This document shows, one piece after another, positions 17,529 to 64,000 of a stretch of 64,000 bases of DNA. The DNA is from Squalus acanthias. Taxonomy: Eukaryota. The first letter of the stretch is position 1; each line of letters opens with the position of its first letter. The notes under the pieces were generated by a model. That model was not told the origin of the DNA. It saw nothing but the letters and a program-made list of their open reading frames with translations, and made no database searches. A program made the position numbers and the translations under genes. Location: contig CM059440.1 in NCBI GenBank assembly GCA_030390025.1, positions 52,142,001-52,206,000 of the forward strand, given 5' to 3'.

Positions 17529-17686
17529 TCACGTAATGCCGTGTTCATTTTGTTTCTCTCCATTTGCCAGTGAAACACGTTTCTTGCACACGGCTATGAC
17601 TAGAATTACAATTATAAATTCAATAGCAAGGACAGTGACTGCAAGCATCCAGCGATTTCTTGTTGGAACGTGATCAGTTTTCAATT
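17529..17686 (-). CDS. Gene A exon 4: transmembrane segment and short cytoplasmic tail
   Basis: Acceptor tttcccacAG, phase 1; ELKTDHVPTRNR-WMLAVTVLAIEFIIVILVIAVC-KKRVSLANGEKQNEHGIT*; hydrophobic stretch followed by a basic stop-transfer KKR. Confidence 0.85.
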
Positions 17687-19209: not shown

Positions 19210-19494
19210 CTACAGAAAGACCAAATGTTCGAGAAACTGATTGGTGTAGAACATCATTTCTTAATCTGAATGTGTAGTTCGAACTCCTATTGGTGTCATT
19301 GATTTGCAGAATACTCTGCAGGGAGTATAGACCATCTCCACTTTGTTGGTACGAAGTCTCAGACAGTGTGGAAATATCCTCATTTTCTTCATTGTACCAG
19401 GAAACAGTAGCCTCAGGTTAACCTTGGGACTCGAATCTGAACACTGTCCAGGATGGTGTTAATTGGATAAAAAAGTCAGGTTCCTTGTAGTATG
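19210..19494 (-). CDS. Gene A exon 3: B7-type IgC domain, cysteine-free, with in-frame TAA
   Basis: Acceptor ctacAG, donor G|GTAAGT; AYYKEPDFFIQLTPSWTVFRFESQG*PEATVSWYNEENEDISTLSETSYQQSGDGLYSLQSILQINDTNRSSNYTFRLRNDVLHQSVSRTFGLSV. Clearly paralogous to 46549-46830. Confidence 0.85.
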
Positions 19495-20079: not shown

Positions 20080-20430
20080 CTGCAAATATTAGAGACACAA
20101 TGCCCTGGCCATTTCCTTTTGCGTTCCTGACTAAGCACAGGTACTGTCCAGCATCCTCTGGTCTCACTCTGTCCAGCTTCACCGAAACGTTCCCTTGTTT
20201 TAATTCCTCTGGGAATAAGCTTGTCCTCCCCGAATACCGAGGGCTTTGGCGACTCAGTTGCTCTTTTCCATAATAACTATAAACAACTTCCTCCGTCTCG
20301 ACACGGTGCCAACTGATGAACAGCAGATACAGTGACGATTCACCCTGAGCTGTAAAGCTGCAACTCAGCACCGTGTACTGGCCGTAGACAGCAGTCACTG
20401 GTGCTTCTGGGGTGTGGACTTGAAACTGAG
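20080..20430 (-). CDS. Gene A exon 2: IgV domain (B7/CD276-like)
   Basis: Acceptor ttcacAG, donor G|GTACAT, 351 nt, phase 1-1. V-set motifs VLSCSF, ISW, YSGRTSLFPEELKQGNVSVKLDRVRPEDAGQYLC. Confidence 0.92.
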
Positions 20431-20704
20431 CTGTGAATTCAAACAAATAGATTAGTAACAGCATTGTTCCAAGAGATTTAATCTTGACTCTTCAGAATAT
20501 TTTACTTTAAAAGGATGATTAATACGAGATTTAATCTTGAACACAGGAAAGCACTAAGTAGTAATTATCCCCACAGCTGTATTTTCTCTTCTCCAGAAGG
20601 GTTGATATTTCCTGGGTTGATATTTTCTGTGATCTATTGAAATAGAAAAAGTTTTGTTCCCTCACCTCACAAAATGGACATCAAAAAAAGTAACTGCAGC
20701 AACA

Positions 20705-44680: not shown

Positions 44681-45884
44681 CTGGAAATGCATTTTTATTT
44701 TCCCCATTCTATATTGTATGAGTGAATTATCATAAGGAAAAAGAAAGAGCATTAAAAAGCATCCAGAAAGAAGCAACATTTGTTAAGGTGGCATTGGCAA
44801 AAAAAACTGCCTTTTGCCTTGTAGAAATGCCAAATTCTGTGCTCCCGGCAGGAAAGCCACACTGAAAGGGATCAGAAGTTGGGGGAGGAGAGATACTGCA
44901 CTGTAGCCCCAATTCTCTGATCGCCCCCTCCCACAAATTGAACTTTCCAAGTGTTTTTCGTCAGCTCAATTGCTACAGCACTGTGAAGAGCTGTTATACC
45001 ATTAAGTCACAGCAATGAATATCCCCCCCTGCTGAAACAGGTACGATCCACCCATGGACAGTTTGTTGAAAGACATATCGGCCCGTATTTTGCGAGGCCC
45101 ACGGGTGCGTACGAGGTGCCCAGGAGTCCTCAGGATGAAAGCACTAACTCTCCGTGCGCGCAGAGACTGAAGGCAAGTGCGCATCTCTTTTGCTGGTCGG
45201 AGGCTTCTGTTCGCAGGAAGCCTCTGATCGGGATTTCAGGCCCATCAGGTCATGAAGTATAGTTTTGGTGGATCGTATTTCTACCCAAATCATTTTTCTT
45301 GTAAACCAATGCTAGAATTAGAATTATGATCAGCAATCCAGTTGTTATCAGGGGAGCAAGCACCATCCATCGCTTTCTTGTAAAATCAGTTTGAATTTCT
45401 GTAAAATAAAAGTTACAGCAATGCTTTCAGTGCTAGTTTGAATTTCTTTGACAATACATTTTAAATGAACAATTTGACTTCAAAAATGCTAATTATATGA
45501 TGCATAAAATGTGACATTGAATAAGCTGGTACTAAATTAGAAGTTACAGATGTGGCTGAAAAGGATCAAATATACTTTGTGTGACTAAGTTAGAACTCAA
45601 TTTGTACATCAAATGGGAGGTTAGCAGTGGAAAACATTTCGGGGAGGATTTAGCCCCCCTCTGTTCTGGAGTAGAGTTAAAATGGAGGTGGTGTGCTCAC
45701 TGCCCCATTCTCAATCCACTGGCATTTTGCTGGGGCCTTCTGCTGGGTGCCCCAGGCAACCACCTGAATCAGGTGCACGCCTCATTAGCCTATGCAAATC
45801 GGGGTCCTGTGAAATACATTCTCACTGGCTTTTTAAACCTGCTTATACATTTTAGGTAATTTACCCGACTGTTTACTACAGGAA

Positions 45885-46280
45885 TGGTAGCATTGTGGTT
45901 GTTACTGGACTAGTAATCCAGAGGCCTGGACTAATGATCCAGAGACATGAGTTCAAATCCCACTCATGGCAGCTGGGGAATTTAAATTCAGTTAATTAAA
46001 TAAATCTGGAATAAAAAGCTAGTATCAGTACTGGCGACAATGAAGCTACCAGATTGTCATAAAAACCCATTTGGTTCACTAATGTCCTTCAGGGAAGGAT
46101 ATCTGCCGTCCTTACCTGGTTTGGCCTATACTCCAGACCCACAGCAATGTGGTTGACTCTTAACAGCCCTCTGAAATGGCCTAGCAAGCCACTCAGCTGC
46201 CAAGAAGGTGGCTCATCAAGGGCAATTAGGGATGGGCAATAAATGCCAGCGATGCCCACATCCCATGAATGAATAAAAAT
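45885..46280 (+). mobile_element. tRNA-derived SINE (second family)
   Basis: Homologous to 13890-14282. Confidence 0.75.
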
Positions 46281-46548
46281 CATTTTGAACTGACACCTTG
46301 GCAGAGTGTCTGCTCAGTAAAACTCGGTGATACAGAAGCAGCCCAAAAAAGGTAAATTATTTGTGTGGCCAGGTGAAGGAGCACTTCTCCCGGCTCCACA
46401 AGAATGATGTGGGCCACTGTCACTACCTCTCCACCCTGCTTCCCATGATCACAACCCCCCTCATGTCAGCTGCCAGATAGTTAATATCTAGGCCTTCTCC
46501 TATTTGGGGAAAAGATTCACTGCATAGGATCCAAATCAATTAACTTAC

Positions 46549-46830
46549 CCAACGAAAGAAATGTCCTGGAAAGGGACTGCTGCAGAACATCATTCCTTAA
46601 TCTAAATGTGTAGTTTGAACTCCTACTGGTATCATTGGTTTGCAGAATACTCCGCAGTGAATACAGTCCATCTTCATGAAGTTGGCACAAGGTCTCAGAC
46701 AGGGCAGAAATATCCTGGTGTTTTTCATTGTACCAGAAAACAGTAGCTTTGGGGAAACCTTGGGATTCAAAGGCGAAAACTGTTCCATCTGGTGTTCGTT
46801 TGATTATTAGGCTGGGTTCTGTGTAGTACG
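46549..46830 (-). CDS. Gene B IgC exon (B7-type, canonical Cys replaced by Phe)
   Basis: Acceptor ttcctcAG, donor G|GTAAGT, 282 nt open; AYYTEPSL...VFAFESQGFPKATVFWYN...GLYSLRSIL...NYTFRLRNDVLQQSLS. Confidence 0.9.
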
Positions 46831-47865
46831 CTGAGGAATTTAAAAAAAAGTAGTCAATAGACAAAGGAAATAAAATTCATCAAATACCATCCAAGGTTTT
46901 AATTCCTGCTACCATTTTGGGGGGTGGGGGGGTGAGGAAATTGAAAAGCAACAATTTTCTCCTAAAGGCAGTAACTCATGCCAGAGCATGGTTCCACAAA
47001 CACCAGCAGTCCTCCAGTACATCACACAAGTCGTCATTCTTCCCATGTCATCTTAGATGGAATGTTTGCAGGCAAATTGACCATTACATCAGAGCCCAAT
47101 CCAGTCCTCACAGGACAGCTACTTCACGTAGCTTCCAGCAGGGATCAATGGCTGGCAATCAAAAGCAGGAACCCTACCAGAGTTTTCTCTTCCTAGTTCA
47201 TGGGCAGAGGCCAAATGAAGTGTTGCCCTGGTTAAGGTCAGGTAACCTGGGAACAAACTAGCTAAAATCAAACCAGATACTCCCGGCTCTGTATATAGTA
47301 AGAATATAGCAACTACTCCAGCTAATCAAATTAGTAGGTCCATGTGTCCAGTGGCTTTTCAATACTTAAAAAACCCAAGATTTAGCTTCTGCCTTATCTT
47401 ACAATGATACGTCAATCATAGTAAGCATACAAGTGCCACGTGTCAGTGTACTTAAATAAGTCAGCTTGTTGGATGGAACCTGGAGGTTGTTTCCAGTGTT
47501 TTTAATACTATTGTCTAAAAATCTATATATACACACACTCAGTCGTGGATGCTCAGTCGTTGAGTATATTCAACAGATCAATAGATTTTTGGATACTAAG
47601 GAAATCAAAGGATATGGGGATAGTGCGGGAAAGTGGAGTAGAAGTAGAAGATCAGCCATGATCTTATTGAAGGGCAGAGCAGGCTCGAAGGCATCGCCTT
47701 GTTTAAGGTTGCTCCGCTACACTATTGATTTAATAAAAACAAACACTCAAAAATAGCAACTGATTTCAATTGCGTGAAAAGGACTTATACTGAAATCATA
47801 CATTAAACATTTTAATCTACAACACTGGAAGAAAAAAAAAAGTCAAGATGCAAATTAAAACATAC

Positions 47866-48204
47866 CGGCAAAATTTAGAGACACGATTCCTGTACTAATT
47901 TCTATTGGAGTGCTGATAAAGCACTTGTACTGCCCAGCATCCTTTGGTCTGACTCCTTCTAATTTTAGGGAAGCATTTCCCAATTTAAACTCCTCTGGGA
48001 AAAGGCTCGCTCTCCCCGAATACTGCCGACTCTGCCGATCTTCGCTGCTGTTGGAACTGAAGATCACCTCTTTGGTCTCGACACGTTGCCAGATGATGAT
48101 GATCTGGTCTAAGGAGTCACCAATGAGGAAGTGACACGGCAGGACTGTATTTTGACCATGGATGGCGAGTACAGCTTCTTCCCAAACACTTACTTGTTGT
48201 TGAT
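47866..48204 (-). CDS. Gene B IgV exon (B7/CD276-like)
   Basis: Acceptor ttttacAG, donor G|GTATGT, 339 nt open; DQQQVSVWEEAVLAIHGQNTVLPCHF...IIIWQRVETKEV...YSGRASLFPEEFKLGNASLKLEGVRPKDAGQYKCFIS. Confidence 0.92.
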
Positions 48205-48796
48205 CTGTAAAATTGCAGATGGATTAACTACTCTTTTCATAGACAAATAATATATTTCAATCCATCACATTAAAAAAATACCATTCCTGCGGTATCTACT
48301 CCATCAAAGCAAGTGTTAGAGTTGAACATCCGTCCGCCTTTGCAGAATTTAATTGGCCAGTGTAAACAGGGCAGAATTCCAATGTGTAGGTTCTGCCCCA
48401 AATTTCTGGCCAAGGGTAGAAAAATCAGGCTTTCTGCCCTCTCCCTGTCCCAGGAATTTCAGGGCCTTAATCTTGCAGAAAGATCATGCCTCACTTTTGC
48501 AATTTGGAAAATGCACAGCATCAATGGGAGACATTTGTCAGACCTCGACAGCAAAATACTATCAGCTATATTACTAATACAGGTCTTGAATTCATGCTCA
48601 GCACCAAGCAGACTTCCCAGCATTAACCATTGCAAAACAAACATGTTTACCGCGCTGGTAAACCAGGACATTCTGGTTTGTATTTGTTCTTGTGCAGTAC
48701 TTTTTCCTCCTATCAGATGAACCCAGCCTTTAAAGTGCAGAAGGTTGCAAAAGTTACTAACAAGTTACTGAAATTGCAAGAGTTACTAGCAATAAT

Positions 48797-49182
48797 GGCC
48801 CGGATTTTGTAGTCAGTGGCTCGACCATCATTACGCTTACAGCTGCCCCCACAGACTTTGTGCAGGCTTTTGAGCAGCAACTTACAGTACTTAGAGATCA
48901 TTTTCAGCGTGGACTTATCATGCCATTAAAAATTCACTTACACATGAATGCACCAGCCCTAACTTTTTCTACCGTGTTTAGTGGACAAAAACTGCAACTT
49001 CACGCCCTTAATGCAGTGTCTCTCGGCGAGGTACCAGTGTAGCGCAACTTGTGGAGGAGCAACATCCCGATTTCTCCATTTAACTGCGCATGTGCGGAAT
49101 CCGAAAGTTGCTGTCCAATTTACTTCATAATAACGGTGAGCGCGGTTTGCCTCACGTTATTTTGACCGCAAAAATCTGGGCC
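48797..49182. mobile_element. MITE in gene B intron
   Basis: Imperfect TIRs GGCCCGGATTTTGTAGTCA / TGACCGCAAAAATCTGGGCC; TSD not perfect. Confidence 0.7.
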
Positions 49183-49275
49183 ATGTCTATGAAGCGAAAA
49201 TCCAAAAGATCACAACTTATTTTTAGCATTGCAAAGGCTTAGTTATCAAGTATATACAAAAGATTTTAAACTTAC

Positions 49276-49339
49276 CAGAAAACAACACTAATTTTATCAT
49301 CATCGTCAGAAAAGCAGAACTCTGAGAACGTTGAAGCAT
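49276..49339 (-). CDS. Gene B leader exon (coding part; the exon probably starts at the acceptor at 49354)
   Basis: MLQRSQSSAFLTMMIKLVLFS followed by G|GTAAGT, phase 1; upstream acceptor tttattcacAG implies a further 5' exon. Confidence 0.65.
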
Positions 49340-50181
49340 CTTATTAATCTGATTCTGTGAATAAAGTAATGAATTCAAAGTTATCATTCAGTTTGTTACA
49401 ATTTGCAGTTTCCCTTCCTCTCCTGAAGGTGGTGACTCTCCATTTCCCCCAGCAGTGGTTGCCCTGACACTTTACCCGAGTCCCCAATATTCATACGTGA
49501 GCCTCGACAATCGATATCAGCAGACGATCAAACATCACAGCCAAGCACAATCCCCTCCTCAACCAGCATCCATCCACATGATTTTCCACATACAGATCAC
49601 TAGATAGCAGTCAGGAGAAGGAAACCCTAACCCATATAATAATGCCCCTACTGTTAGCCTAGCTGAGATTAGCAAGATCTGTATAGGCCAGGAATTGAAG
49701 CAAATAGATTATTGGCTGGTATGAATGAGTTGTGGATACTTTACCAAGTCAACATTTTGTTAAATGCAATCCTTTGTACTTTAACAAAGGAAGTAACTCT
49801 TCTCCCCCATGTTAATTTTCCTCTCAATCTCCTTCCCTGAAGTTTGACTCTCTGCAGGGGTATGGTTCCACAGGACAGGTCCACCCAAGTGGCCATTATT
49901 CATGTATAAACCTCGACAGCCTGCTCAACCACAAAACCATCACAGTTCAGTCTGTTCCTGTACCCACCTGATGCACATACCTGCATCCTGCTGATGGTGG
50001 TTCCCGGAGAGGGAATCTTGACCAATTTTCTAACTAACCCAGAGGTCAACGATTACACCACTGGTACAGCCCAGCTGAGATTAACTAAATCAGCAGAGCC
50101 TGGAGATCTAAGGAGTATGATTTTTATTTGTAGCAGACAAAGAGCAAAGGAACAAAAATCAAAACAGTAATAAGCATGTAC

Positions 50182-50306
50182 CTGCGAATATTAGAGACAC
50201 AATGCCCTGGCCACTTCCTTTTGCATTACTGACAAGGCACATGCACTGTGTCTCACTCTGTCTAGCTTCACTGAAACGTTCCCTTGTTTTAACTCCTCTG
50301 GGAATA
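50182..50306 (-). pseudogene. Gene C: 3' remnant of IgV exon (paralog of gene A)
   Basis: Aligns to 20080-20217 with the same donor context. A 13-nt deletion removes the EDAG codons, and the 5' part is replaced by a CR1 starting ~50309. Confidence 0.85.
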
Positions 50307-50308
50307 TC

Positions 50309-51875
50309 AGAACATAAGAAATAGGAGCAGGAGTAGGCCATTTGGCCCTTCGAGCCTGCTCCGCCATTCAATAAGATCATGGCTGATCTTCTACCTCATC
50401 TCCATAGACCTCTGGGGTAGAGAATTCCAAAGATTCACTACCCTCAGAAGAAATTTCTCCTCATCTCAGTCCTAAATGGCCGACCCCTTATTCTGAGACT
50501 GTGATCCCTGGCTCCAGACTCCCCAGCCAGGGGAAACATCCTCCCTGCATCTACCCAGTCAAGCCCTGTATGAATTTTTTATGTTTCAATGAGATCACCT
50601 CTCATTCTTCTAAACTCTAGAGAATATAGGCCTAGTCTACTCAATCTCTCCTCATAGGATAATCCCCCCAGCCCAGGAATCAGTCTGGTGAACCTTTGTT
50701 GCACTTCCTCTATGGCAAGTATATCCTTCCTTAGGTAAGGAAACCAAAACTGTACACAATACTCCAGGTGTAGTCTCACCAGGGCCCTATATAATTGCAG
50801 TAAGACGTCTTTACTCTTATACTCAAATCCTCTTGTAATAAAGGCCAACATACCATTTGCTTTCCTAATTGCATGCTGTACCTGCATGTTAACTTTCAGT
50901 GATTTGTGTACAAGGACACCCAGGTCCCTCTGAACATCAACATTTCCCAATCTCTCGCTACTTAAAAAAACTCTGCTTTTCTGTTTTTCCTACCAAAGTG
51001 GCTAACTGCCACATTATATTCCATTTGCCATGTTCTTGCCCACTCACTTAAATCGGTCTATATCCCCTTGAAGCCTCCTTGCACCCTCCTCACAACATAC
51101 ATTCCCACCCAGCTTTGTATCATCAGCAAGCGTGGATATATTACATTTGGTCCCCTCATCCAAATCATTGATTTAGATTGTGAATAGCTGAGGCCCAAGC
51201 AGTGATCCTTGCAGTACCCCACTAGTTACAGCCTGCCAACCCGAAAAAGATCCGTTTATTTTCTACTGTTTTCTGTCAGTTAACCAATCCTCTATCCATG
51301 CTGCTATATTACTCCATGAGCCCTAATCTTGTAATAACCTTTTATGTGGCACCTTATCAAATGCCTTTTGGAAATCCAAATCTACTACATCCACTGGTTC
51401 CCCTTTATCTACCCTGCTGGTTACATCCTCAAAACTAATAAATTTGTCAAACACGATTTCCCTTTCATAAATCCACGTTGACTCTGTCTAATCATGTTAT
51501 GATTTTCTAAGTGCCCTGATACCACATCGTTAACAATGGATTCCAGTATTTTCCCGACGACTGATGTCAGGCTAACTGGCCTGCAGTTCTGTGTTTTTTC
51601 TCTCCCTCCTTTCTTGAATAGCGGTGTTACATTTGCAACCTTCCAATCTGCTGGGACCATTCTACAATCGAGGGAATTTTGGAAGATCAAAACCAATGCA
51701 TCCACTATCTCTTGAGCCACCTCTTTTAGAACCCTAGGATATAGGCCGTCAGGTCTGGAGGATTTGTCGGCTTTTAGTCCCATTAGTTTCTCTAGTACTT
51801 TTTCTCTACTATTTTAATTACGTTAAGTTCCTCACCCTCATTAGACCCTTGGTTCCCCACCATTTTTAGTATTCT
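50309..51875 (-). mobile_element. 5'-truncated, degraded CR1
   Basis: RT/C-terminal motifs and TTCTTATGTTCT tail. Confidence 0.9.
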
Positions 51876-52795: not shown

Positions 52796-55700
52796 CTCGG
52801 TCCCTTCATCCAAGTCATTAATGTAGATTGTAAATAGTTGAGGTCCCAGCACCGATTCCTGCGGCACCCCACTAGTTACCGTTTGCCAACCGGAAAATGA
52901 CCCATTTATCCCGACTCTCTGCTTTCTGTTAGTTAGCCAATTCTCTGTCCTTGCTAATATATTACCCCCAACTCTGTGAGCTCTTATCTTATGCAGTACC
53001 CTTTTATGTGGCACCTTATCGAATGCCTTCTGGAAATCCAAAGACACCACATCCACTGGCTCACCCTTATCCACCCTGCTCGTTACATCCTCAAAGAACT
53101 CCAGCAAATTTGTTAAACATGATTTCCCTTTCATAAAACCATGCTGACTCTGCTTGACTGCATTATGATTTTCCAAATGCCCTGCTACTGCTTCCTTAAT
53201 GAAGGACTCCAGCATTTTCCCAATGACAGATGTTAGGCTAACTGGTCTATAGTTTCCTGCTTTCTGTCTCCCTCCTTTCTTAAATAGGGGTGTTACATTT
53301 GCGGTTTTCCAATCCGCTGGGACCTCTCCAGAATCCAGGGAATTTTGGTATATTGCAACCAATGCATCTCTGCAGCCACTTCTTTTAAGACCCTGGGATG
53401 CAGGCCATCTGGTCCAGGGAACTTGTTGTCTTTTAGTCCCATTATTTTACCAAGTACTTTTTCCTTAGTGATAATGATTGTCTTTAGTTCACCCCTCCCT
53501 GTGGCCACTTGATTATCCATTATTGGGATGTTGTTAGTGTCTTCTACTGTGAAGACAGATACAAAATATTTGTTCAGAGTCTCTGCCATTTCCCCGTTTC
53601 CCATTATTAATTCCCCAGTCTCATCCTCTAAGGGACCAACATTTACTTTAGCTACTCTCTTCCTTTTTATATGCCTGTAGAAGCTCTTACTATCTGTTTT
53701 AATATTTCTTGCCAGTTTACTCTCAATTCATCTTCTCTCTATTATTTTTTTAGTCATCCTTTGCTGGTTTTTTAAAAAATTGCCCAATCCTCTGGCCTCC
53801 CACCAATCTTGGCAACATTGTATGCCTTCGTTTTCAATTTGATACCATCCTTTACTTCCTTAGTTAGCCAGGGATGGTGCTCTCTTCTCAAAATCTCTCA
53901 CTGGAATATATTTTTGTTGAGAGTTATGAAATATCTCCTTAAATGTCCACCACTGCATTTCAACTGTCTTACCCTTTAATTTATTTTTCCAGTCCACTTT
54001 AGCCAGTTCTGCCCTCATGCCATTGTAATTGCCTTTGTTTAAGATCAGGACACTGGTTTGAGATACAACTTTCTCACCCTCCAACTGAATTTGAAATTCA
54101 ACCATGCTATGATCACTCTTTAACATAAGAACATAAGAAATAGGAGCAGGAGTAGGCCAATCGGCCCCTCGAGCCTGCTCCGCCATTCAATAAGATCATG
54201 GCTGATCTGATCCTAACCGCCAATCTACTATCTATCACAGAACCATCTCCTGCATCTAACAGAATTGCACACACAAAATAGGAGCAGAATCAGGCTACAC
54301 AGTCCCTGGGCCCGCTCCACTACCCACAGGGCCATGACCGATCCGAACCTAGACTCATGTCCAAATTCCTGCCCGCTCCCCGTAACCCTTAATGCCCTTT
54401 ACTTCTAGGAAACTGTCTATTTCTGTTTTAAATTTAATTAATGTTGTAGCTTCTACAGCTTTTTGTGGCAGCATATTCCATGGACCTACCACCCTCTGAG
54501 TGAAGTAGTTCCTCCTCATCTCAGTTTTGAAAGAGCAGCCCCTTATTCTAAGACTATGTCCCCTAGTTCTCGTCTCACCCGTCATCGGGAACATCCTCCC
54601 CGCATCCACCCGATCCAACCCCTTCACAATCTTATATGTTTCAATAAGATCGCCTCTCATTCTTCTGAACTCCAATGAGTAGAGTCCCAATCTACCCAAC
54701 CTCTCCTCATATGACCACCCCCTCATCCCCGGGATTAACCGAGTGAACCTTTTTTGCACTGCCTCGAGAGCAAGGATGTCTTTCCTTAAGTAAGGACACC
54801 AAAACTGTATGCAGTATTCCAGGTGCGGTCTCACCAATACCTTGTACAACTGAAGCAATACCTCCCTATTTTTATATTCTATCCCCCTAGCAATGAAAGC
54901 CAACATTCCATTTGCCTTCTTAATCACTTGCTGCACCTGCATACTAACCTTTTGAGTTTCGTGCACCAGGACCCCCAGATCCCTTTGCACTTCAGTACTC
55001 TCCAGTTTCTTGCCATTAAGATAATAAATTGCTCTAGGATTTTTCCTGCCAAAGTGCATCACCTCACACTTTCCAGTGTTGTATTCCATCTGCCAAATCT
55101 CTGCCCACTTACTTAGCCTGTCTATGTCCCCTTGCAGGTTTTTTATGTCCTCCTCACTCACTACTTTCCCTCCCATCTTTGTATCATCTGCAAATTTTGA
55201 TATGTTACACTTGGTCCCTTCCTCCAAATCGTTAATATAGATTGTGAAGAGTTGGGGACCCAGCACTGACCCCTGTGGAACACCACTAGTTACTGATTGC
55301 CAGTCTGAGAATGAACCATTTATCCCAACTCTTTGCTTTCTGTTAGATAGCCAATCCTCTATCCATGCCAGAATATTACCCCCAATCCCGTGATTTTTTA
55401 CCTTAAGCAATAATCTTTTGTGTGGCACCTTGTCAAATGCCTTTTGGAAGTCTAAATACACTACGTCCACTGGTTCCCCTTTATCCACTCTATATGTTAC
55501 TTCCTCAAAGAACTCCAGCAAATTTGTCAAACATGACTTCCCCTTCGTAAAACCATGCTGACTTTGTCCTATTAAATTATGATTATCCAAATGTCCTGTT
55601 ACTGTTTCCTTAATAATGGACTCCAAAATTTTACCTACCACAGATGTTAGGCTAACCGGTCTATAGTTACCAGCCTTCTGTCTACTGCCCTTTTTAAATA

Positions 55701-58700
55701 AGGGTGTTACATTAGCAGTTTTCCAGTCTGCCGGGACCTTAGCAGAATCCAGGGAGTTTTGAAAAATTATTACCAATGCATCTACAATCCCTACCGCCAC
55801 TTCCTTCAAGACTCTAGGATGTAAGCCATCAGGTCCAGGTGATTTATCCGCCTTGAGTCCCATTATTTTACCGAGTACCACTTCCTTAGTGATTTTGATC
55901 GTGTTTAGCTCCTCTCCCCCTATAGCCCCCTGTTTGTCCAGTGTTGGGATATTCTTAGTGTCTTCTACTGTAAAGACTGATACAAAATATTCATTCAGTG
56001 TTTTTGCCATCTCCATATTTCCCACCATTAATTTCCCGGTCTCATCCTCTAAGGGACCAACATTTACTTTAGCCACCCTTTTTCTTTTTATATAACTATA
56101 AAAACTCTTACTATCTGTTTTTATATTTTTTGCTAATTTACTTTCATAATCTATCTTCCCTTTCTTAATCAATCTTTTTGTTATTTTTTGCTGCCTTTTA
56201 AAGTTTTCCCAATCCTCCGTCCTCCCACTAGATTTCGCTACCTTATATGCCCTTGTTTTTAGTCGAATACTATCCTTAATTTCTTTACTTAGCCACGGAT
56301 GACTGTCCTTTCTTTTACACCCTTTTCTTTTCAGTGGAATATATTTTTTTTGGAAGTTGTAAAATAACTCCTTGAATGTACACCACTGATCATGTGTCGT
56401 CTTACCCTTTAATCTATTTTCCCAATCCACTCTACTCAATTCCGCTCGCATACCTTCATAGTCTCCTTTATTCAAGCTTAGCACGCTTGTTTGAGATCCA
56501 ACCTTCTCACCCTCTAATTGAATATGGAATTCAACCATGTTATGGTCACTCATTCCAAGGGGATCCTTTACTAGGACATTTTTAATTAATCCTGTCTCGT
56601 TACACAGGACCAGATCTAAGGTTGCTTGCCCCCTGGTCGGTTCAGTTACATACTGCTCAAGAAACCCATCCCTAATACACTCAATGAACTCATCCTCAAG
56701 GCAGCCCTGCCCCATTTGATTTGTCCAATTAATATGATAGTTAAAATCCCCCATAATTATAGATGTTCCCTTATTACATGCCTCAACTATTTCCTGATTG
56801 ATACTCCGTCCAACAGAGTTGCAACTGTTCGGAGGCCTATAGACTACGCCCACTAGTGTTTTTTTCCCCTTATTATTCCTTATCTCCACCCAAACTGTTT
56901 CATTATCATGATTTTTTGACCCAATATCATTACTCTGTATTACAGTGATTCCTTCCTTTATTAACATAGCCACCCCACCTCCCCTTCCTTCCTGCCTGTC
57001 CTTCCTGATCGTTAAATAACCTGGTATGTTTAATTCCCAGGCATTGTCACCCTGCAGCCATGTTTCTGTAATGGCCTTTCCTAGAGGATCCTTTACTATG
57101 AGATCATTTATTAATTCTGTCTCATTACACAGTACCAGATCCAAGATAGCCTGCTCCCTGGTTGGTTCCATTACATACTGTTCTAAGAAACCATCCCAGA
57201 TACACTCTATGAACTCCTCCTCAAGGCTACCATGGCCAATTTGATTTGTCCAATCAATATGGAGATTAAAATCACCCATGATTATTACCGTACCTTTTTT
57301 ACAGGCCTCCATTATTTGTTGATTTATACTCTGTCCAACAGTATTGCTACTGTTCGGGGGCCTGTAGACTACGCCCACCAGAGACTTTTTCCCCCTTATT
57401 TTTTTATCTCCACCCAAACCGATTCTACATCTTGATGTTCTGAGCCAATATCACTTCTCATCACTGCACTGATTTCATCCTTTACCAACAAAGCCACCCC
57501 ACCTCCCTTTCCTTTGTCTATCCTTCTGAATTGTCAAATACCCTGGAATATTCAGTTCCCAGCCCTGGTCACCTTGCAACCACGTCTCTGTAATGGCAAT
57601 CAGATCATACCCATTTGTATCTATTGCGCCGTCAACTCATCTATCTTGTTACGAATGCTGCGTGCATTCAGATATAGAGCTTTTAACTTTGTCTTTTTAC
57701 CATTTCTCATTGTTTTGGCCCCATTTTCTGTTGCACTCTTACTTTTAAACATTCTGTCCCTTCCTGTCATACTCTGGTTATTATTTCCCCCATCTCTATC
57801 CTGCTCTATTGTTTTCTCATTTCTCATTGACTTTTTTAATTCCCGCTCACCTGGACCCTCTCCCCCGCTATTTAGTTTAAAGCCCTTTTTACAGCCCTAG
57901 TTAATCGATTCGCCAGGACTCTAGCCCCAGCATGGTTCAAGTGAAGCCCGTCCAAATGGAACAGCTCCCTCTTATCCCAGTACTGGTGCCAGTGCCCCAC
58001 AAACCCGAAACCCATTTCTCCCACACCAGTCTTTGAGCCACTTGTTCATTTCTCTGATCTTATTTACCCTATGCAAATTCGCTCGTGGCTCAAGTAGTAA
58101 TCCAGAGATTACCACCTTTGTGGTTCTGCTTTTTAAATTTAGCCCCAGCTGCTCAAACTTTCACAGCAGAGCCTCTTTCTTTGTCCTACCTATGTCATTG
58201 GTACCTACGTGGACCATGACAATTGGATCTTCCCCCTCCCACTCCAAGTTCCTCTCCAGCCCAGAGGGGATGTCCTTAACCCTGGCACCGGGCAGGTAAC
58301 ACAGCCTTCGGGACTCACGCTCTCGGCTGCAGAGAACAGCATCTATTCCCGACTATAGTGTCCCCTATCACTACAACATTTCTTTTTACTCCCCCCACTT
58401 GAATGGCTCCCTGTACCACGGTGCTGTGGTCAGATTGCTCATCCTCCCTGCAGTCCCTGCCCTCGTCCACACAGGGAGCAAGAATCTCGTACCTGTTGGA
58501 CAAGGCAAAGGGCTGAGGCTCCTCCATCACTACCTCCTGGATCCCAAAACCTGCTTTGCTTGTAGTCACACCCTCCTGTCCCAGACCATGGGCCAAATTG
58601 GAAATAATTACTCTAGTGGGTGTGACTGCCTCCTGGAACTTAGTGTCCAGGTAACGCTCCCCCTCCCTAATGCGTCCGTGTCTGAAGCTCGGACTCCAGC

Positions 58701-59574: not shown

Positions 59575-61959
59575 CAGACCTGAAACGTTAACTCTTGTTT
59601 CTCTCTCTCCACGGATGCTGCCTGACCTGTTGAGTATTTGCAGCATTTTCTGTTATTTCAGATTTGCAGCATCTGCAGTATTTTGCTATTACAAGTGAAA
59701 CTACTGTTATTGCTTTGGGCAATTGCTCAGTGGTGAAAAGACCACCTGAAACTGTGTAGATCGTTCATTCAAACGTGTGCAAGGAAAAAGTTACATTTAA
59801 AGACTTACCTTGAGCCAAACCGAATTCAACAGCCACCAAAACAGCCAGCAGACTTCTCACCATACTTTGCTCTCCTCGACAGCTGACGAGACAAGACCAG
59901 TGAAAATCATTTCTTTATCGTTTTCCACGGCTGCAAAAGACCCGCATCTTCTGGAAGCGGCAGCCGGGGCAGAGCTCGGTGACAGAACTCCCAACCTCAA
60001 GTGGGCGTCGCCTGCAGCCCGCTCTCTCTTTTTTGAGTCAAACATATTTATTTAAATATGGTAGTACTTGTTACAACTCAATTACATAATAAATCCATGA
60101 TATTCATTAGCCGCAATAAAACAAAGCCTTAAAAACAGCTTTAGGGTTAACAGTATAAATGCAGTGGTAAATTTTACAGATAAATCAATATTAACAGTAC
60201 AGGTACCCATAGTGAAAAACAATTTTACGCCAGTCCTATTGGCAATCTAGTGACTCCTCGTTTTTACTTGGTATTATCTAACCATGTAATATCATAGTCT
60301 TTATACACGGTCTTCAGCTTTTCCACGGAAAATGAACCACTTACTCAAAACCCGTGGAAGCTCCCTTTTATAGTCCCTACATCTTCCAAATTACCCCATA
60401 GAAATAAAGGAGGAAAAAAGAAAAAGAAGCCTGCGACCGCTCAGCTCGGTGCCGGGAGGCACATGCCTGACAAATTCGGTTTCCAGGTGCCTAGTGGGAC
60501 TGCGCGTGAGGTTTTTTTTAACCAGAAGAGGGTGCTATTTACGTTTTTTTAATTTAAAATTAAAAACATTTTATTGACAGTTAATGAAATTTACAGAGCT
60601 CACATGAGGAGAAATTAGGGCAGGTGACCAAAAGTTTGGTCAAAGAGGTAGTTATTAAAGAAAGAAAGACTTGCATTTCTATAGCGCCTTTCACAACCAC
60701 CAGACGTCCCAAAGCGCTTTACAGCCAATGAAGTACTTTTTGAAGTGGAGTCACTGTTGCAATGTGGGGAAAACAGCAGCCACTGCACACAGCAAGCTCG
60801 CACAAACAGCAATGTGAAAATGAACAGATAATCTGGGTTTTTTTTAAAGTGATGCCGGTCGAGGGATATATATTTGCCCAGGACACCAGGGAGAACTCCG
60901 CAACCTTCTTCGAAATATTGCCATGGGATCTTTTACATCCACAGGAGAAAGCAGACAGGACCTCAGTTTAACATCTCATACGAAAGACAGCACCTCCAAC
61001 AGTGCAGCACTCCCTCAGCACTGCACTGGAGCGTCAGCCTAGATTTATGTGCTCAAGTCCCTGGAATGGGTCTTGAACCCACAACCTTCTGACTCAGAGG
61101 CGAGTGTGCTGCCAACTGAGCCACAGCTGACACTCTCTTTAAGAAGTGTCTTAAAGGAGGAAAGAGAGGTAGAGAGGCAGGGAGGTTTTGGGAGGGAATT
61201 CCAGAGCTTCGGACCTAGGCAACAGAAGGCACGGCCACCAATGGTGGAGCGATTATAATCAGGGATGCTCAAGAGAGCAGAATTAGAGGAGCGCAGATAT
61301 CTCGGGGAGGGGGAGGGGGGGGGGGGGGGCGGCGGCGAGAGGAGATTACAGAGATAGGGAGGGGCGAGGCCCTGGAGGAATTTGAAAACAAGGATGAGAA
61401 TTTTGAAATTGAAACGTTGCTTAACCGGGAGCCAGTGTTGGTCAGTGATGTAGGAAGAGGGCGAAGAGGCAACACTTTGGGATGGAGAAATGTGAAGGAC
61501 GAAGCAATCAGGCGAGACGGCAGTTGGAGTCGGAGAGAGAGGGAGGAGTTGACGGTTAGTGTTGGGAGGAGGTGCCAGGAAGCAGCATCAGGGACCAGGT
61601 GGATTTTGGGGTTGGGGGAGAGGTGATAGGAGGTGCCAGTCAGGCAGCAGAAAAACAATTTAAAAAATACAACTTCCAGGGAGGGAGAGAGCAACTTCCG
61701 AACGGACCTGAGTGACTCAGTTCAGAGGACGACTTTTGGAGTGAGACACACGGCAAGATTGCACAACATAAGACATTTGTATCACGATCATCGTAAACCG
61801 TGCCTTTGGCGTTTGTTGGTTTTCTTGGATTTTGTATAACCCACTGGCCTTTGAAATGTAATATAGACGTATACCGATTGTTGATTCTCACTCAGTACTT
61901 GCAGTGGTTAATTCTTCAGGGAAGAAACTCTCAGCAATGCAGCGTGGAGGGTACATCAG
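59575..61959 (+). repeat. Segmental duplicate of the gene A 5' region (22440-25400)
   Basis: Colinear high identity including the PLE remnant, leader exon, SINE, L2 fragment and unique flank. Confidence 0.92.
59809..59863 (-). pseudogene. Gene C leader exon (intact copy of gene A exon 1)
   Basis: MVRSLLAVLVAVEFGLAQ followed by G|GTAAGT, phase 1. Confidence 0.8.
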
Positions 61960-64000
61960 GGGCTATCAGTGGAAGGGCAATGGCAGACATTTAGAGATCG
62001 CATGGATGAACTACAACAATTGTACATCCCGGTCTGGCGTAAAAATAAAAAAGGGAAGGTGGCTCAACCATGGCTAACAAGGGAAATCAGGGATAGTATT
62101 AAAACCAAGGAAGTTGCATACAAATTGGCCAGAAGTAGCAGCAAACCCGGGGACTGGGAGAACTTCAAAACTCAGCAGAGGAGGACGAAGGGTTTGATTA
62201 GGGCAGGGAAAATAAAATATGAAAGGAAGCTTGCAGAGAACATTAAAATGGACTGCAAAAGCTTCTATAAATATGTAAAAAGAAAGAGGTTAGTAAAAAC
62301 AAACGTAGGTCCCCTGCAGTCGGAAACAGGGGAAGTCGTAATGGGGAACAAGGAAATGGCAGATCAATTGAACAAGTACTTTGGTTCGGTGTTTACTGTG
62401 GAGGACACACACAACCTGTCGGAAATAAAAGGGGTCAGAGGATCTGGTAAGAGGGAGGAGCTGAGGGAAATCCTTATTAGTCGGGAAAAGGTATTGGGGA
62501 AATTGATGGGACTGAAGGCTGAAAAATCCCCGGGGCCTGATGGTCTGCATCCCAGAGTACTTAAGGAGGTGGCCTTGGAAATAGTGGATGCATTGACGAT
62601 CATTTTCCAACATTCCTTAGACTCTGGATCAGTTCCGATGGAGTGGAGGGTGGCCAATGTAACCCCTCTTTTTAAAAAAGGAGGGAGGGAGAAAGCAGGG
62701 AATTATAGACCGGTCAGCCTGACATCGGTCGTGGGTAAAATGATGGAAGCAATTATTAAAGATGTCATAACAGACCATTTGGAAAGTGGCGACATGATAG
62801 GTCCAAGTCAGCATGGATTTGTGAAAGGGAAATCATGCTTGACAAATCTTCTGGAATTTTTTGAGGATGTTTCCAATAGGGTGGACAGGGGGGAACCAGT
62901 AGATGTGGTGTATTTGGACTTTCAGAAGGCCTTCGACAAGGTCCCACACAAGAGATTGGTGAGCAAAGTTAAAGCACATGGGATTGGGGGTAATGTGTTG
63001 ACGTGGATTGAGAACTGGTTGGCACACAGGAAACAAAGAGTAGGAGTAAATGGGTACTTTTCAGAATGGCAGGCAGTGACCAGCGGGGTACCGCAGGGTT
63101 CGGTGCTGGGACCCCAGCTGTTTACATTATATATTAATGATTTGGACGAAGGGATTAAATGTAATATCTCCAAATTTGCGGATGACACTAAATTGGGAGG
63201 CAGTGTGAACAATGAGGAGGATGCTAGGAGGCTACAGAGTGACTTGGACAGGTTGGGTGAATGGGCAAATGTATGGCAGATGAAGTACAATGTGGATAAA
63301 TGTGAGGTTATCCACTTTGGTGGTAAAAATAGAGAGGCGGACTATTACCTGAATGGTGGCAGATTAGGGAAAGGGGACGTGCAACGAGACCTGGGCGTCA
63401 TGGTACATCAGTCACTGAAGGTGGGAATGCAAGTGCAGCAGGCAGTCAAGAAAGCAAACGGAATGATGGCCTTCATAGCAAGAGGATTTGAGTACAGGAG
63501 TAGGGAGGTGATGCTACAGTTGTACAGGGCCTTGGTGAGGCCACACCTGGAGTATTGTGCGCAGTTTTGGTCCCCTAACTTAAGGACATTCTTGCTATTG
63601 AGGGAGTGCAGCGAAGGTTCACTAGATTGATTCCTGGGATGGCCGGACTGACATATCAAGAAAGATTGGGTCAACTGAACTTGTATCCTCTGGAGTTCAG
63701 AAGAATGAGGGGGGATCTTATAGAGACATTTAAAATCCTGACTGGTTTAGACAAATTAGATGCGGGCAGAATGTTCCCAATGGTAGGGAAAACTAGAACC
63801 AGGGGTCACAGTCTAAGGATTAAGGGGAAGCCATTTAGGACTGAGCTGAGGAGGAACTTCTTCACCCAGAGAGTGGTGAATCTATGGAATTCTCTTCCAC
63901 AGAAGGTTGTTGAGGCCAGTTCGCTAAATATATTCAAAAGGGAGTTAGATATAACACTCACAACTAAGGGGATCAAGGGGTATGGCGAGAAAGCAGGAAT
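61960..64000 (+). mobile_element. 5'-truncated CR1 ORF2 (553-aa open stretch, frameshift near 63585), runs off the window
   Basis: Full RT motif set including KFADDTK. Confidence 0.95.

What the first reader, a model, noticed from the sequence alone, without database searches (positions are those of the whole stretch)
46549..46830. Disulfide-less IgC domain: both canonical cysteines replaced by Phe in both paralogs
Seen: the B-strand position reads F-E-S-Q-G-[F/*]-P (C-Q-A-E-G-Y-P in PD-L1) and the F-strand reads Y-T-F-R-L-R-N (Y-S-C-L-V-R-N in CD276). The codons are TTT at 46771-46769 and 46606-46604 in B, and TTC at 19435-19433 and 19270-19268 in A, each one base from TGY. The core Trp (WYN) is kept and the IgV disulfide is intact. 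Inference: a paired substitution retained in two diverged paralogs, with different synonymous codons, suggests selection for an aromatic core replacing the Ig disulfide. That could define an undescribed B7 subfamily. Gene B also has a lone Cys (SETLCQ) and a stalk Cys that could form alternative or inter-chain bonds.
Basis: partly seen in the sequence, partly recalled or inferred. Interest (0 to 1): 0.85.

Follow-up and report, generated by a model that had tools for sequence, protein, structure and literature searches.

The report
Shark B7-H3-like gene without IgC disulfide
Two neighbouring shark genes related to the immune checkpoint B7-H3 have a constant-type antibody-like domain in which the usual pair of bridging cysteines is replaced by phenylalanines, and this turns out to be an old, conserved trait of a whole fish gene lineage that land vertebrates appear to lack.

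Summary
Window 46549-46830 (-) is a phase-1/phase-1 IgC exon. Its B-strand and F-strand cysteine columns hold Phe (TTT 46771-46769, 46606-46604), and the core Trp is kept. Paralog A (19210-19494) has TTC at both columns.

The trait is not private to these two genes. It marks a clade labelled 'CD276 antigen-like' in databases. That clade is found in chimaera, sharks, rays, lungfish, bichir, sturgeon, gar, bowfin and teleosts, with no tetrapod among the named members. In the domains I compared, 167 were Cys/Cys, 131 had hydrophobic residues at both columns, and none was mixed.

The clade is sister to canonical CD276, which keeps the cysteines and sits beside it in the same fish species.

Gene B looks functional:
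- spliced RNA contigs confirm three exon junctions;
- dN/dS between A and B is 0.18 in the IgC exon;
- AlphaFold gives a seven-strand Ig fold at pLDDT 95.8, closest to B7-H3.

Gene A carries an in-frame TAA and is probably a pseudogene or null allele.

The parts
49276..49339 (-). Gene B exon 1: start codon (ATG 49339-49337) and signal peptide MLQRSQSSAFLTMMIKLVLFS, donor GT at 49275-49274, phase 1
   Evidence: Sequence. tblastn to Mustelus P0001 residues 1-27 (weak alone, E 0.23). Spliced contigs in runs X8 and X9 join 49276 to 48204.
47866..48204 (-). Gene B exon 2: IgV domain with intact Cys..Trp..Cys (VLPC, IIWQR, YKC)
   Evidence: Sequence. Best solved relative is CD276. Joints 48204>49276 and 46830>47866 with GT..AG ends on the minus strand.
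46549..46830 (-). Gene B exon 3: the IgC domain of the finding, 93 whole codons, no disulfide possible (a single Cys, C48)
   Evidence: Pfam C2-set_3 E 1.1e-6, 29 bits against a cut-off of 27. AlphaFold pLDDT 95.8. Foldseek best match is B7-H3.
46769..46771 (-). TTT, Phe20, in strand B at the column of the first canonical Cys
   Evidence: (PD-L1 alignment). Strand B is residues 15-24 in the model. Unchanged in the contigs of runs X8 and X9.
46604..46606 (-). TTT, Phe75, in strand F at the column of the second canonical Cys
   Evidence: Strand F is residues 71-79. Invariant in 25 of 25 rows of alignment A2. Unchanged in contigs of X8, X9 and X19.
46733..46735 (-). TGG, Trp32, the core tryptophan of strand C
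   Evidence: Invariant in 52 of 52 rows of alignment A1.
45250..45398 (-). Gene B exon 4: stalk, transmembrane helix, short tail, stop TGA at 45252-45250; acceptor AG at 45400-45399
   Evidence: Sequence. Contigs of X8 and X9 run from the IgC exon into 45399 and on to 45200 (X8) and 45278 (X9) without a further joint.
20080..20430 (-). Gene A IgV exon, open, Cys pair intact; an in-frame ATG at 20464-20462 lies just upstream
   Evidence: Sequence. CD276 is the best solved relative. tblastn.
19210..19494 (-). Gene A IgC exon: Phe/Phe (TTC 19435-19433, 19270-19268), no Cys, in-frame TAA at 19420-19418
   Evidence: 66 of 93 residues are identical to gene B, dN/dS 0.18.
17529..17686 (-). Gene A stalk/TM/tail exon, stop TGA at 17531-17529, Glu inside the TM helix
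   Evidence: Sequence. tblastn to Callorhinchus P0002 residues 236-286, E 8.5e-5.
50180..50361 (-). Frameshifted remnant of the 3' half of an A-type IgV exon, upstream of gene B
   Evidence: tblastn. 78.8% nucleotide identity over 212 nt to gene A's IgV, against 64% over 139 nt to gene B's. A LINE lies directly upstream.

Best explanation
Gene B (leader, IgV, IgC, TM/short tail; window 49339-45250, minus strand) encodes a type I membrane protein of the B7 family. It belongs to an old sister lineage of B7-H3/CD276 that fishes keep beside canonical CD276. In this lineage the IgC domain has no intradomain disulfide. The B-strand Cys is replaced by a large hydrophobic residue (Phe here; Tyr, Leu, Met or Val elsewhere). 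The F-strand Cys is replaced by an almost invariant Phe. Shown: the columns, the conservation, the expression and splicing, and a confident Ig fold prediction. Inferred: the two side chains fill the place of the cystine against the invariant Trp, so the domain folds and stays stable without a bridge. Also inferred: the loss happened once, before cartilaginous and bony fishes split, and Phe has since been held by structural constraint. The protein most likely acts as a cell-surface ligand like other B7 members, with the IgV domain as binding face and the IgC as a spacer. Its receptor is unknown. Gene A is an old tandem duplicate of another orthogroup in the same clade, disabled in this assembly by one nonsense codon.
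For: Columns. Clade-wide trait: in 311 IgC domains from 269 of the 275 sequences searched, 167 were Cys/Cys, 131 were non-Cys at both columns (Y/F 74, F/F 39, L/F 10, L/V 5, M/F 1, V/F 1, Y/L 1), 0 were mixed, and 13 were aligned at only one column. The set is redundant and was picked by similarity. Taxa: all named Cys-less members are fishes, from Callorhinchus to Danio, among the 30 of 54 representatives that I looked up. Separate lineage: on the ectodomain tree, with the two trait columns removed, the 21 Cys-less rows form one clade (96/95) sister to 12 canonical CD276 rows (83/97), with PD-L-like as outgroup. Amia, Albula, Acipenser, Megalops and Arapaima have both kinds. Function of B: spliced contigs with GT..AG joints at 46830>47866 (X8, X9, X20) and 48204>49276 (X8, X9), and IgC joined to TM (X8, X9). 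IgC dN 0.163, dS 0.909 between A and B. AlphaFold mean pLDDT 95.8 with seven strands; F20 lies in B, W32 in C, F75 in F. Foldseek best matches are mouse and human B7-H3 IgC, TM 0.83-0.85. Gene B pairs with Mustelus XP_078094432.1 (99/93) while gene A does not.
Against: The packing of Phe20, Phe75 and Trp32 was not measured, because the tools give no model coordinates. On the IgC-only tree (97 columns) canonical CD276 nests inside the Cys-less rows through unstarred branches, so monophyly rests on the two-domain tree. No VTCN1, HHLA2 or butyrophilin outgroups were in the trees. The RNA label of the runs is a guess by the tool, and in organism A the spliced contigs have depth of only 2-4. One contig of organism B (X8) carries a change that turns Arg11 of this exon into a stop, and gene A carries a stop too. 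The locus therefore tolerates null alleles. No binding partner or cell type is known.
Confidence: 0.8

Rival explanations
1. Both copies are decaying pseudogenes, and the lost cysteines are part of that decay.
For: Gene A has an in-frame TAA. An IgV remnant lies at 50180-50361. One organism-B contig has CGA>TGA at 46798.
Against: Gene B's four exons are open, with consensus splice sites used in RNA contigs. dN/dS is 0.18 in the IgC exon. The same replacement occurs in annotated genes across fishes. The fold prediction is confident.
Confidence: 0.05
2. These are simply the shark orthologs of CD276 (B7-H3), fast-evolving, and not a separate lineage.
For: CD276 is the best solved relative of all three Ig exons. 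NCBI names the Callorhinchus member 'CD276 antigen'. No cartilaginous-fish canonical CD276 appeared among the 120 hits listed of 406.
Against: Bony fishes carry both a canonical Cys-bearing CD276 and a Cys-less gene. Shark genes group with the Cys-less bony-fish genes, not outside both. The Cys-less clade also lacks the five-residue insert before strand B and the conserved CD276 TM/tail.
Confidence: 0.1
3. The lineage and its Cys-less C domain are already described, for instance as the teleost 'B7-H4' or 'B7-H3' of earlier surveys. The finding would then be known.
For: Zebrafish members carry VTCN1 (B7-H4) names, one under an old accession. PMC11599192 (passages) says that surveys of teleosts found B7H3 and B7H4 orthologs, citing Hansen 2009 and Quiniou 2024.
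Against: Seven full-text searches returned no paper on it. PMC3172298, a B7-H3 survey from teleosts to mammals, has 0 occurrences of cysteine or disulfide. Names given by sources are inconsistent, including zgc:172120 and si:dkey-71p21.13. The IgV exons score 61-66 bits to CD276 against 43-47 bits to VTCN1.
Confidence: 0.3
4. The domain is held together by another bond: the lone Cys48 makes an inter-chain disulfide (covalent dimer) that makes up for the lost bridge.
For: C48 lies in strand D (residues 44-50) of the model. It is shared by the B-type orthologs of Mustelus, Rhincodon and Chiloscyllium.
Against: Pristiophorus, the closest relative found (81% identity), has Tyr there. So does gene A, and most of the clade has no Cys in the domain. 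It cannot be the general solution.
Confidence: 0.1

Closest known systems
CD276 / B7-H3 (canonical; solved structures 4i0k, 9lme, 9ly5)
   Same: IgV-IgC-TM layout with one domain per exon and phase-1 introns. It is the best sequence match for every Ig exon and the best structural match. Shared motifs include the G-[YF]-P turn, W in strand C, and [LV]RN..L.Q after strand F.
   Different: Canonical CD276 keeps Cys in strands B and F, has a five-residue insert (SNL[RK]P) before strand B, and has a conserved TM/tail. It forms its own clade with members in ray-finned fishes and tetrapods.
PD-L1 (CD274) IgC domain
   Same: Same spacing from the B-strand residue to the G-[YF]-P turn. HMMER aligns F20 to its Cys.
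   Different: More distant (E 5.6e-5 for IgC; 45-50 bits for IgV). It keeps the disulfide and was used as outgroup.
Ig-fold domains that naturally lack the canonical disulfide (CD2 and CD58 domain 1, CD4 domain 3, intracellular I-set domains of titin and telokin). Recalled from general knowledge, not from any call.
   Same: An Ig sandwich kept stable by hydrophobic core packing in place of the cystine.
   Different: Those are V-like or I-set domains of other families. I know of no B7-family IgC domain described this way, and none turned up in my searches.
VTCN1 / B7-H4
   Same: Several teleost members of the clade carry this name in automatic annotation.
   Different: The solved VTCN1 IgV (4gos) scores 43-47 bits against 61-66 bits for CD276. 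No VTCN1 IgC or full-length sequence was available for a tree.

Membership tests
B7 family (IgV-IgC type I membrane ligands) | N-terminal IgV domain with canonical Cys-Trp-Cys, followed by an IgC domain | tested here: met
   IgV exons of B and A match CD276, PD-L1, BTN and VTCN1. The IgC exon matches Pfam C2-set_3 above its cut-off and folds as a seven-strand Ig domain.
B7 family (IgV-IgC type I membrane ligands) | One exon per domain with phase-1 introns; signal peptide, TM helix and short tail | tested here: met
   Exon ends read. Three junctions were seen in spliced contigs.
B7 family (IgV-IgC type I membrane ligands) | Binds a CD28-family or other immune receptor | not testable with these tools
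   No binding data. PMC11599192 (abstract) lists CD28-family receptors of fishes that are absent in human.
Canonical CD276 (B7-H3) orthogroup | IgC intradomain disulfide (Cys in strands B and F) | tested here: not met
   Phe/Phe at those columns. All 14 canonical CD276 sequences in A3 have both Cys.
Canonical CD276 (B7-H3) orthogroup | Falls inside the CD276 clade on a tree | tested here: not met
   The related database proteins form a sister clade (96/95) on the ectodomain tree. The window's IgC exons sit among the cartilaginous-fish and lungfish Cys-less rows.
Canonical CD276 (B7-H3) orthogroup | Conserved synteny with the CD276 locus | not tested
Fish 'CD276 antigen-like' Cys-less clade (unnamed) | Hydrophobic residue at the B-strand Cys column and Phe at the F-strand column, within YY.EP ... 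G[YF]P ... W ... GLY ... N[YF]TF.L.N | tested here: met
Fish 'CD276 antigen-like' Cys-less clade (unnamed) | Groups with clade members on a tree built without the trait columns | tested here: met
   Gene B's IgC pairs with Mustelus P0001 (99/93). Gene A sits in the same cluster, unresolved.
VTCN1 (B7-H4) orthogroup | Closest relative is VTCN1 | tested here: inconclusive
   For the IgV domain, CD276 outscores VTCN1 by 18-20 bits. No VTCN1 IgC or full-length sequence could be brought into a tree.

The most novel reading that the evidence does not exclude
An ancient B7-H3 paralog lineage without a formal name. It would have arisen before cartilaginous and bony fishes split, been kept in fishes including lungfish, and been lost in tetrapods. 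Its defining mark is an IgC domain whose disulfide was replaced once by an aromatic/hydrophobic pair and held so ever since. As a B7 ligand absent from tetrapods, it would be a candidate partner for one of the CD28-family receptors of fishes that are absent in human (CD28HL1-3, CD28X of PMC11599192).
Probability: 0.4. Interest if true: 0.6.

Novelty: new variant of a known kind. Interest (0 to 1): 0.5.

Why it matters
B7-H3 is a major cancer target whose receptor is still unknown. If it has a sister lineage that coexists with it in fishes and is absent in tetrapods, that gives comparative immunology a natural contrast. Which receptors share this distribution, and which surfaces stay conserved in both lineages? 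For protein science it offers a natural, long-tested example of a constant-type Ig domain of a cell-surface protein doing without its disulfide. The replacement rule is clear: an almost invariant Phe in strand F and a large hydrophobic residue in strand B. That is useful for designing cysteine-free Ig scaffolds. For annotation, it shows that the names now attached to these genes (CD276, VTCN1, butyrophilin) are inconsistent, and that one orthogroup name is needed.

Tried and rejected
Pseudogene decay of gene B: rejected (open exons, spliced contigs, dN/dS, orthologs).

Alternative intradomain disulfide: rejected from the sequence itself. Gene B's IgC has one Cys and gene A's has none.

It lies upstream of the acceptor used in RNA contigs.

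Synteny: not possible.

Measuring Phe-Phe-Trp contacts: not possible. No coordinates are exposed.

Earlier notes of this scan: nothing found.

Literature: seven searches gave nothing on a Cys-less B7 IgC. In PMC3172298 and PMC12151841 I saw only the passages found by term, plus the outline and abstract of the latter. In PMC11599192 I saw passages and the abstract. Hansen 2009 I never tried to fetch (it is known to me only as a reference in PMC11599192); Flajnik 2012 and Quiniou 2024 are not held. I saw nothing of any of the three. Supplements were not opened.

Whether cartilaginous fishes have a canonical CD276: open.

dS for the IgV exons is saturated (pS 0.79), so no ratio is given there.

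Full report
**The observation.** The minus strand of window 46549-46830 is an exon bounded by an AG acceptor and a GT donor, in phase 1 on both sides. In the coding frame it reads YYTEPS...FAFESQGFPKATVFWYN...SETLCQ...SSNYTFRLRNDVLQQ... without a stop.
- Phe20 is TTT at 46771-46769.
- Phe75 is TTT at 46606-46604.
- Trp32 is TGG at 46735-46733.
- The single Cys (C48) is at 46687-46685.

Paralog A (19210-19494) reads ...FRFESQG*PEATVSWYN...SSNYTFRLRNDVLHQ.... It has TTC at 19435-19433 and 19270-19268, no Cys, and a TAA at 19420-19418.

**Are the Phe on the Cys columns?** Four alignments bear on this.
- HMMER against solved structures aligns Phe75 to the Cys of CD276 (Y-S-C-L-V-R-N) and Phe20 to the Cys of PD-L1 (T-C-Q-A-E-G-Y-P).
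- The ungapped HMMER alignment to human CD276 puts Ala19 opposite the B-strand Cys. CD276 has one more residue before the G-Y-P turn. This is the one result against the assignment.
- MAFFT on 36 full-length relatives plus the window's exons puts Phe20 and Phe75 in the Cys columns of 12 canonical CD276 and 3 PD-L-like sequences.
- hhalign of a 25-row profile of the Cys-less genes against a 14-row profile of canonical CD276 (probability 100, E 2.7e-50) does the same.

Paralog A has Arg at position 19, so positions 18 and 20 are the inward-facing ones. With one Cys in B's domain and none in A's, no intradomain bridge is possible.

**What the genes are.** Pfam places the exon in C2-set_3 (E 1.1e-6, 29 bits, cut-off 27). 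CD276 is the best solved relative of the IgC exon and of both IgV exons. For the IgV exons the scores are 61.2 and 66.3 bits on chain 9lme_A, against 43.0 and 46.8 for VTCN1 and about 45-50 for PD-L1.

tblastn with relatives maps gene B as follows:
- leader 49339-49276,
- IgV 48204-47866,
- IgC 46830-46549,
- TM/tail 45398-45250.

Gene A maps as IgV 20430-20080, IgC 19494-19210 and TM/tail 17686-17529. A frameshifted remnant of an A-type IgV exon lies at 50180-50361, next to a LINE.

**The trait belongs to a clade, not to two paralogs.**
- *Search.* HMMER against 1.84 billion representatives with the IgC exon gave 54 hits at E up to 0.001. The best was 71% identical.
- *Names.* I looked up names for 30 of the 54.
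- *Taxa.* The Cys-less hits come from Mustelus, Callorhinchus, Heptranchias, Pristis, Hemitrygon, Hypanus, Amblyraja, Leucoraja, Protopterus, Erpetoichthys, Acipenser, Huso, Amia, Atractosteus, Megalops, Arapaima, Brienomyrus, Conger, Albula, Hemibagrus, Electrophorus, Umbra and Danio. Some have no name. None is from a tetrapod.
- *More members.* Further searches added Rhincodon, Chiloscyllium, Pristiophorus, Rhinoraja, Stegostoma and many cyprinids, characins and catfishes.
- *Counts.* A domain HMM run over all 274 stored proteins plus gene B's exon found 311 domains in 269 sequences. Of these, 167 were Cys/Cys and 131 had no Cys at either column (Y/F 74, F/F 39, L/F 10, L/V 5, M/F 1, V/F 1, Y/L 1). 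Thirteen were aligned at one column only, and none was mixed.

The set is redundant (isoforms, close species) and was gathered by similarity. The counts describe it and are not a census.

**A lineage apart from canonical CD276.** A search with a sturgeon CD276 found canonical CD276, with both Cys in the 14 sequences I fetched, in sturgeon, paddlefish, gar, bowfin, many teleosts, reptiles, birds and mammals. There were 406 hits at E up to 1e-10, of which 120 were listed. Amia, Albula, Acipenser, Megalops and Arapaima have both kinds.

A maximum-likelihood tree of the two Ig domains used 36 database proteins and 216 columns, with the two trait columns removed. It makes the 21 Cys-less rows one clade (96/95) sister to the 12 CD276 rows (83/97), rooted on three PD-L-like rows. 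My group table there labelled only 17 of the 21 rows. The other four lie inside the same clade.

On the IgC-only tree (97 columns) gene B's exon pairs with the Mustelus protein (99/93). Gene A's exon sits unresolved among cartilaginous-fish and lungfish rows. On that tree canonical CD276 nests inside the Cys-less rows through unstarred branches. The short domain alone therefore does not confirm monophyly. The duplication of A and B is older than the split of this shark from Mustelus.

The closest relative found is Pristiophorus japonicus (81% identity in the IgC exon). That suggests the window comes from a squalomorph shark. This is an inference, since run and organism names were coded.

**Is gene B alive?** Contigs of four runs that the tool guesses to be RNA were laid on 45200-49400.
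- *Junctions.* They join 46830 to 47866 (X8, X9, X20) and 48204 to 49276 (X8, X9), with CT..AC ends, which is GT..AG on the minus strand.
- *IgC to TM.* X8 and X9 run from the IgC exon into the TM exon at 45399/45398. There are twelve differing letters at the junction, which I read as one extra codon in organism B.
- *Exon ends.* An X19 contig starts exactly at 46549 and an X20 contig exactly at 47866, both without mismatches.
- *Phe codons.* Neither Phe codon differs in the contigs that cover them.
- *Depth.* Depths are low (2-4 in organism A, 11-64 in organism B). Contigs cannot measure expression.

Between A and B the IgC exon has dN 0.163 and dS 0.909, a ratio of 0.18. In the IgV exons synonymous sites are saturated.

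AlphaFold2 with a 52-row alignment folds the 93 residues at mean pLDDT 95.8 into strands 6-12, 15-24, 29-33, 44-50, 56-64, 71-79 and 84-92. Phe20 lies in B, Trp32 in C and Phe75 in F. Foldseek ranks mouse B7-H3 (4i0k) and human B7-H3 IgC (9ly5) first, followed by ICOS-L, butyrophilins and MHC class II. The alignment given to AlphaFold included canonical CD276, which may add to its confidence.

**Signs of dispensability.** Gene A's TAA is the only defect seen in its three exons. It is one base from TAC, the Tyr common at that place in the clade. I could not check it in reads. In run X8 the contig of gene B's ortholog has G>A at 46798, which turns CGA (Arg11) into TGA. X9, from the same organism, keeps CGA. 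The locus thus seems to carry null alleles and remnants, as expanding immune gene clusters often do.

**How it most likely works.** Shown: a B7-type membrane protein whose IgC domain has no cystine yet is conserved, expressed and predicted to fold. Inferred: the large hydrophobic pair fills the core against Trp32. After the first cysteine was lost, the unpaired partner was replaced too, and the new packing then became the constraint. That would explain why Phe in strand F hardly varies (125 of 131 Cys-less domains) while strand B accepts F, Y, L, M or V. The function is presumably that of a B7 ligand. The partner is unknown.

**Novelty.** The genes are in public annotation, but under shifting automatic names. 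Seven full-text searches found no paper that describes a Cys-less B7 IgC or names this lineage. The library does not hold two of the three papers most likely to show it (Flajnik 2012 and Quiniou 2024). The third, Hansen 2009, I did not try to fetch. I therefore rate the finding as a real and well-supported variant of a known kind. It is of moderate interest, with a fair chance that the lineage is formally undescribed.

Noticed in passing
window 50180-50361 (-): Frameshifted remnant of the 3' half of an IgV exon. It is closer to gene A (78.8% over 212 nt) than to gene B (64% over 139 nt), lies upstream of gene B, and abuts a LINE insertion.
   Followed up: partly
window 19418-19420 (-): In-frame TAA in gene A's IgC exon, one base from TAC. 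All other A exons are open. Pseudogene, null allele and assembly error could not be told apart, because no reads were laid here.
   Followed up: partly
window 46798: In run X8 (organism B) the spliced contig has G>A, turning Arg11 (CGA) of gene B's IgC into TGA. Run X9 of the same organism does not. The same X8 contig has small insertions and deletions in the TM/tail exon (45277-45341).
   Followed up: no
window 46520-46548 (-): Reading through the IgC donor gives GKLIDLDPMQ and then a stop. Annotated isoforms of Pristiophorus (P0201) and Chiloscyllium plagiosum (P0200) continue into the same GKLIDL. This is either a conserved intron-retaining soluble form or a shared annotation artefact. The laid contigs were spliced.
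   Followed up: no
window 17529-17686 (-): Gene A's transmembrane helix holds a Glu (LAIEFIIVIL). So do its relatives in Callorhinchus (P0002), Rhinoraja (P0202) and Rhincodon (P0199). A charged residue in a TM helix may point to a partner chain.
   Followed up: no
window 20462-20464 (-): An ATG lies in frame 31 bases upstream of gene A's IgV exon. It gives MLLLIYLFEFTA, which aligns with the signal peptides of relatives. The leader may be fused to the IgV exon in gene A.
   Followed up: no
window 54358-57450 (-) and 61912-63627 (+): Long open LINE reading frames of 1031 and 572 residues, judged reverse transcriptase from the printed translations alone. Much of the window is retrotransposon sequence.
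   Followed up: no
window about 45900-46330 and 47456-47737: Repeats in gene B's introns are covered by thousands of contigs in all four runs, and many reads run on into unlike sequence. They behave like abundant SINE-type elements carried in many transcripts.
   Followed up: no
proteins P0203, P0055, P0057, P0064, P0065: Annotated shorter products of clade members. P0203 of Chiloscyllium punctatum goes from the IgV straight to the TM, skipping the IgC. For the 228-residue isoforms of Pristis, Hypanus and Hemitrygon I did not check what they lack. The Cys-less domain may be optional in some transcripts.
   Followed up: no
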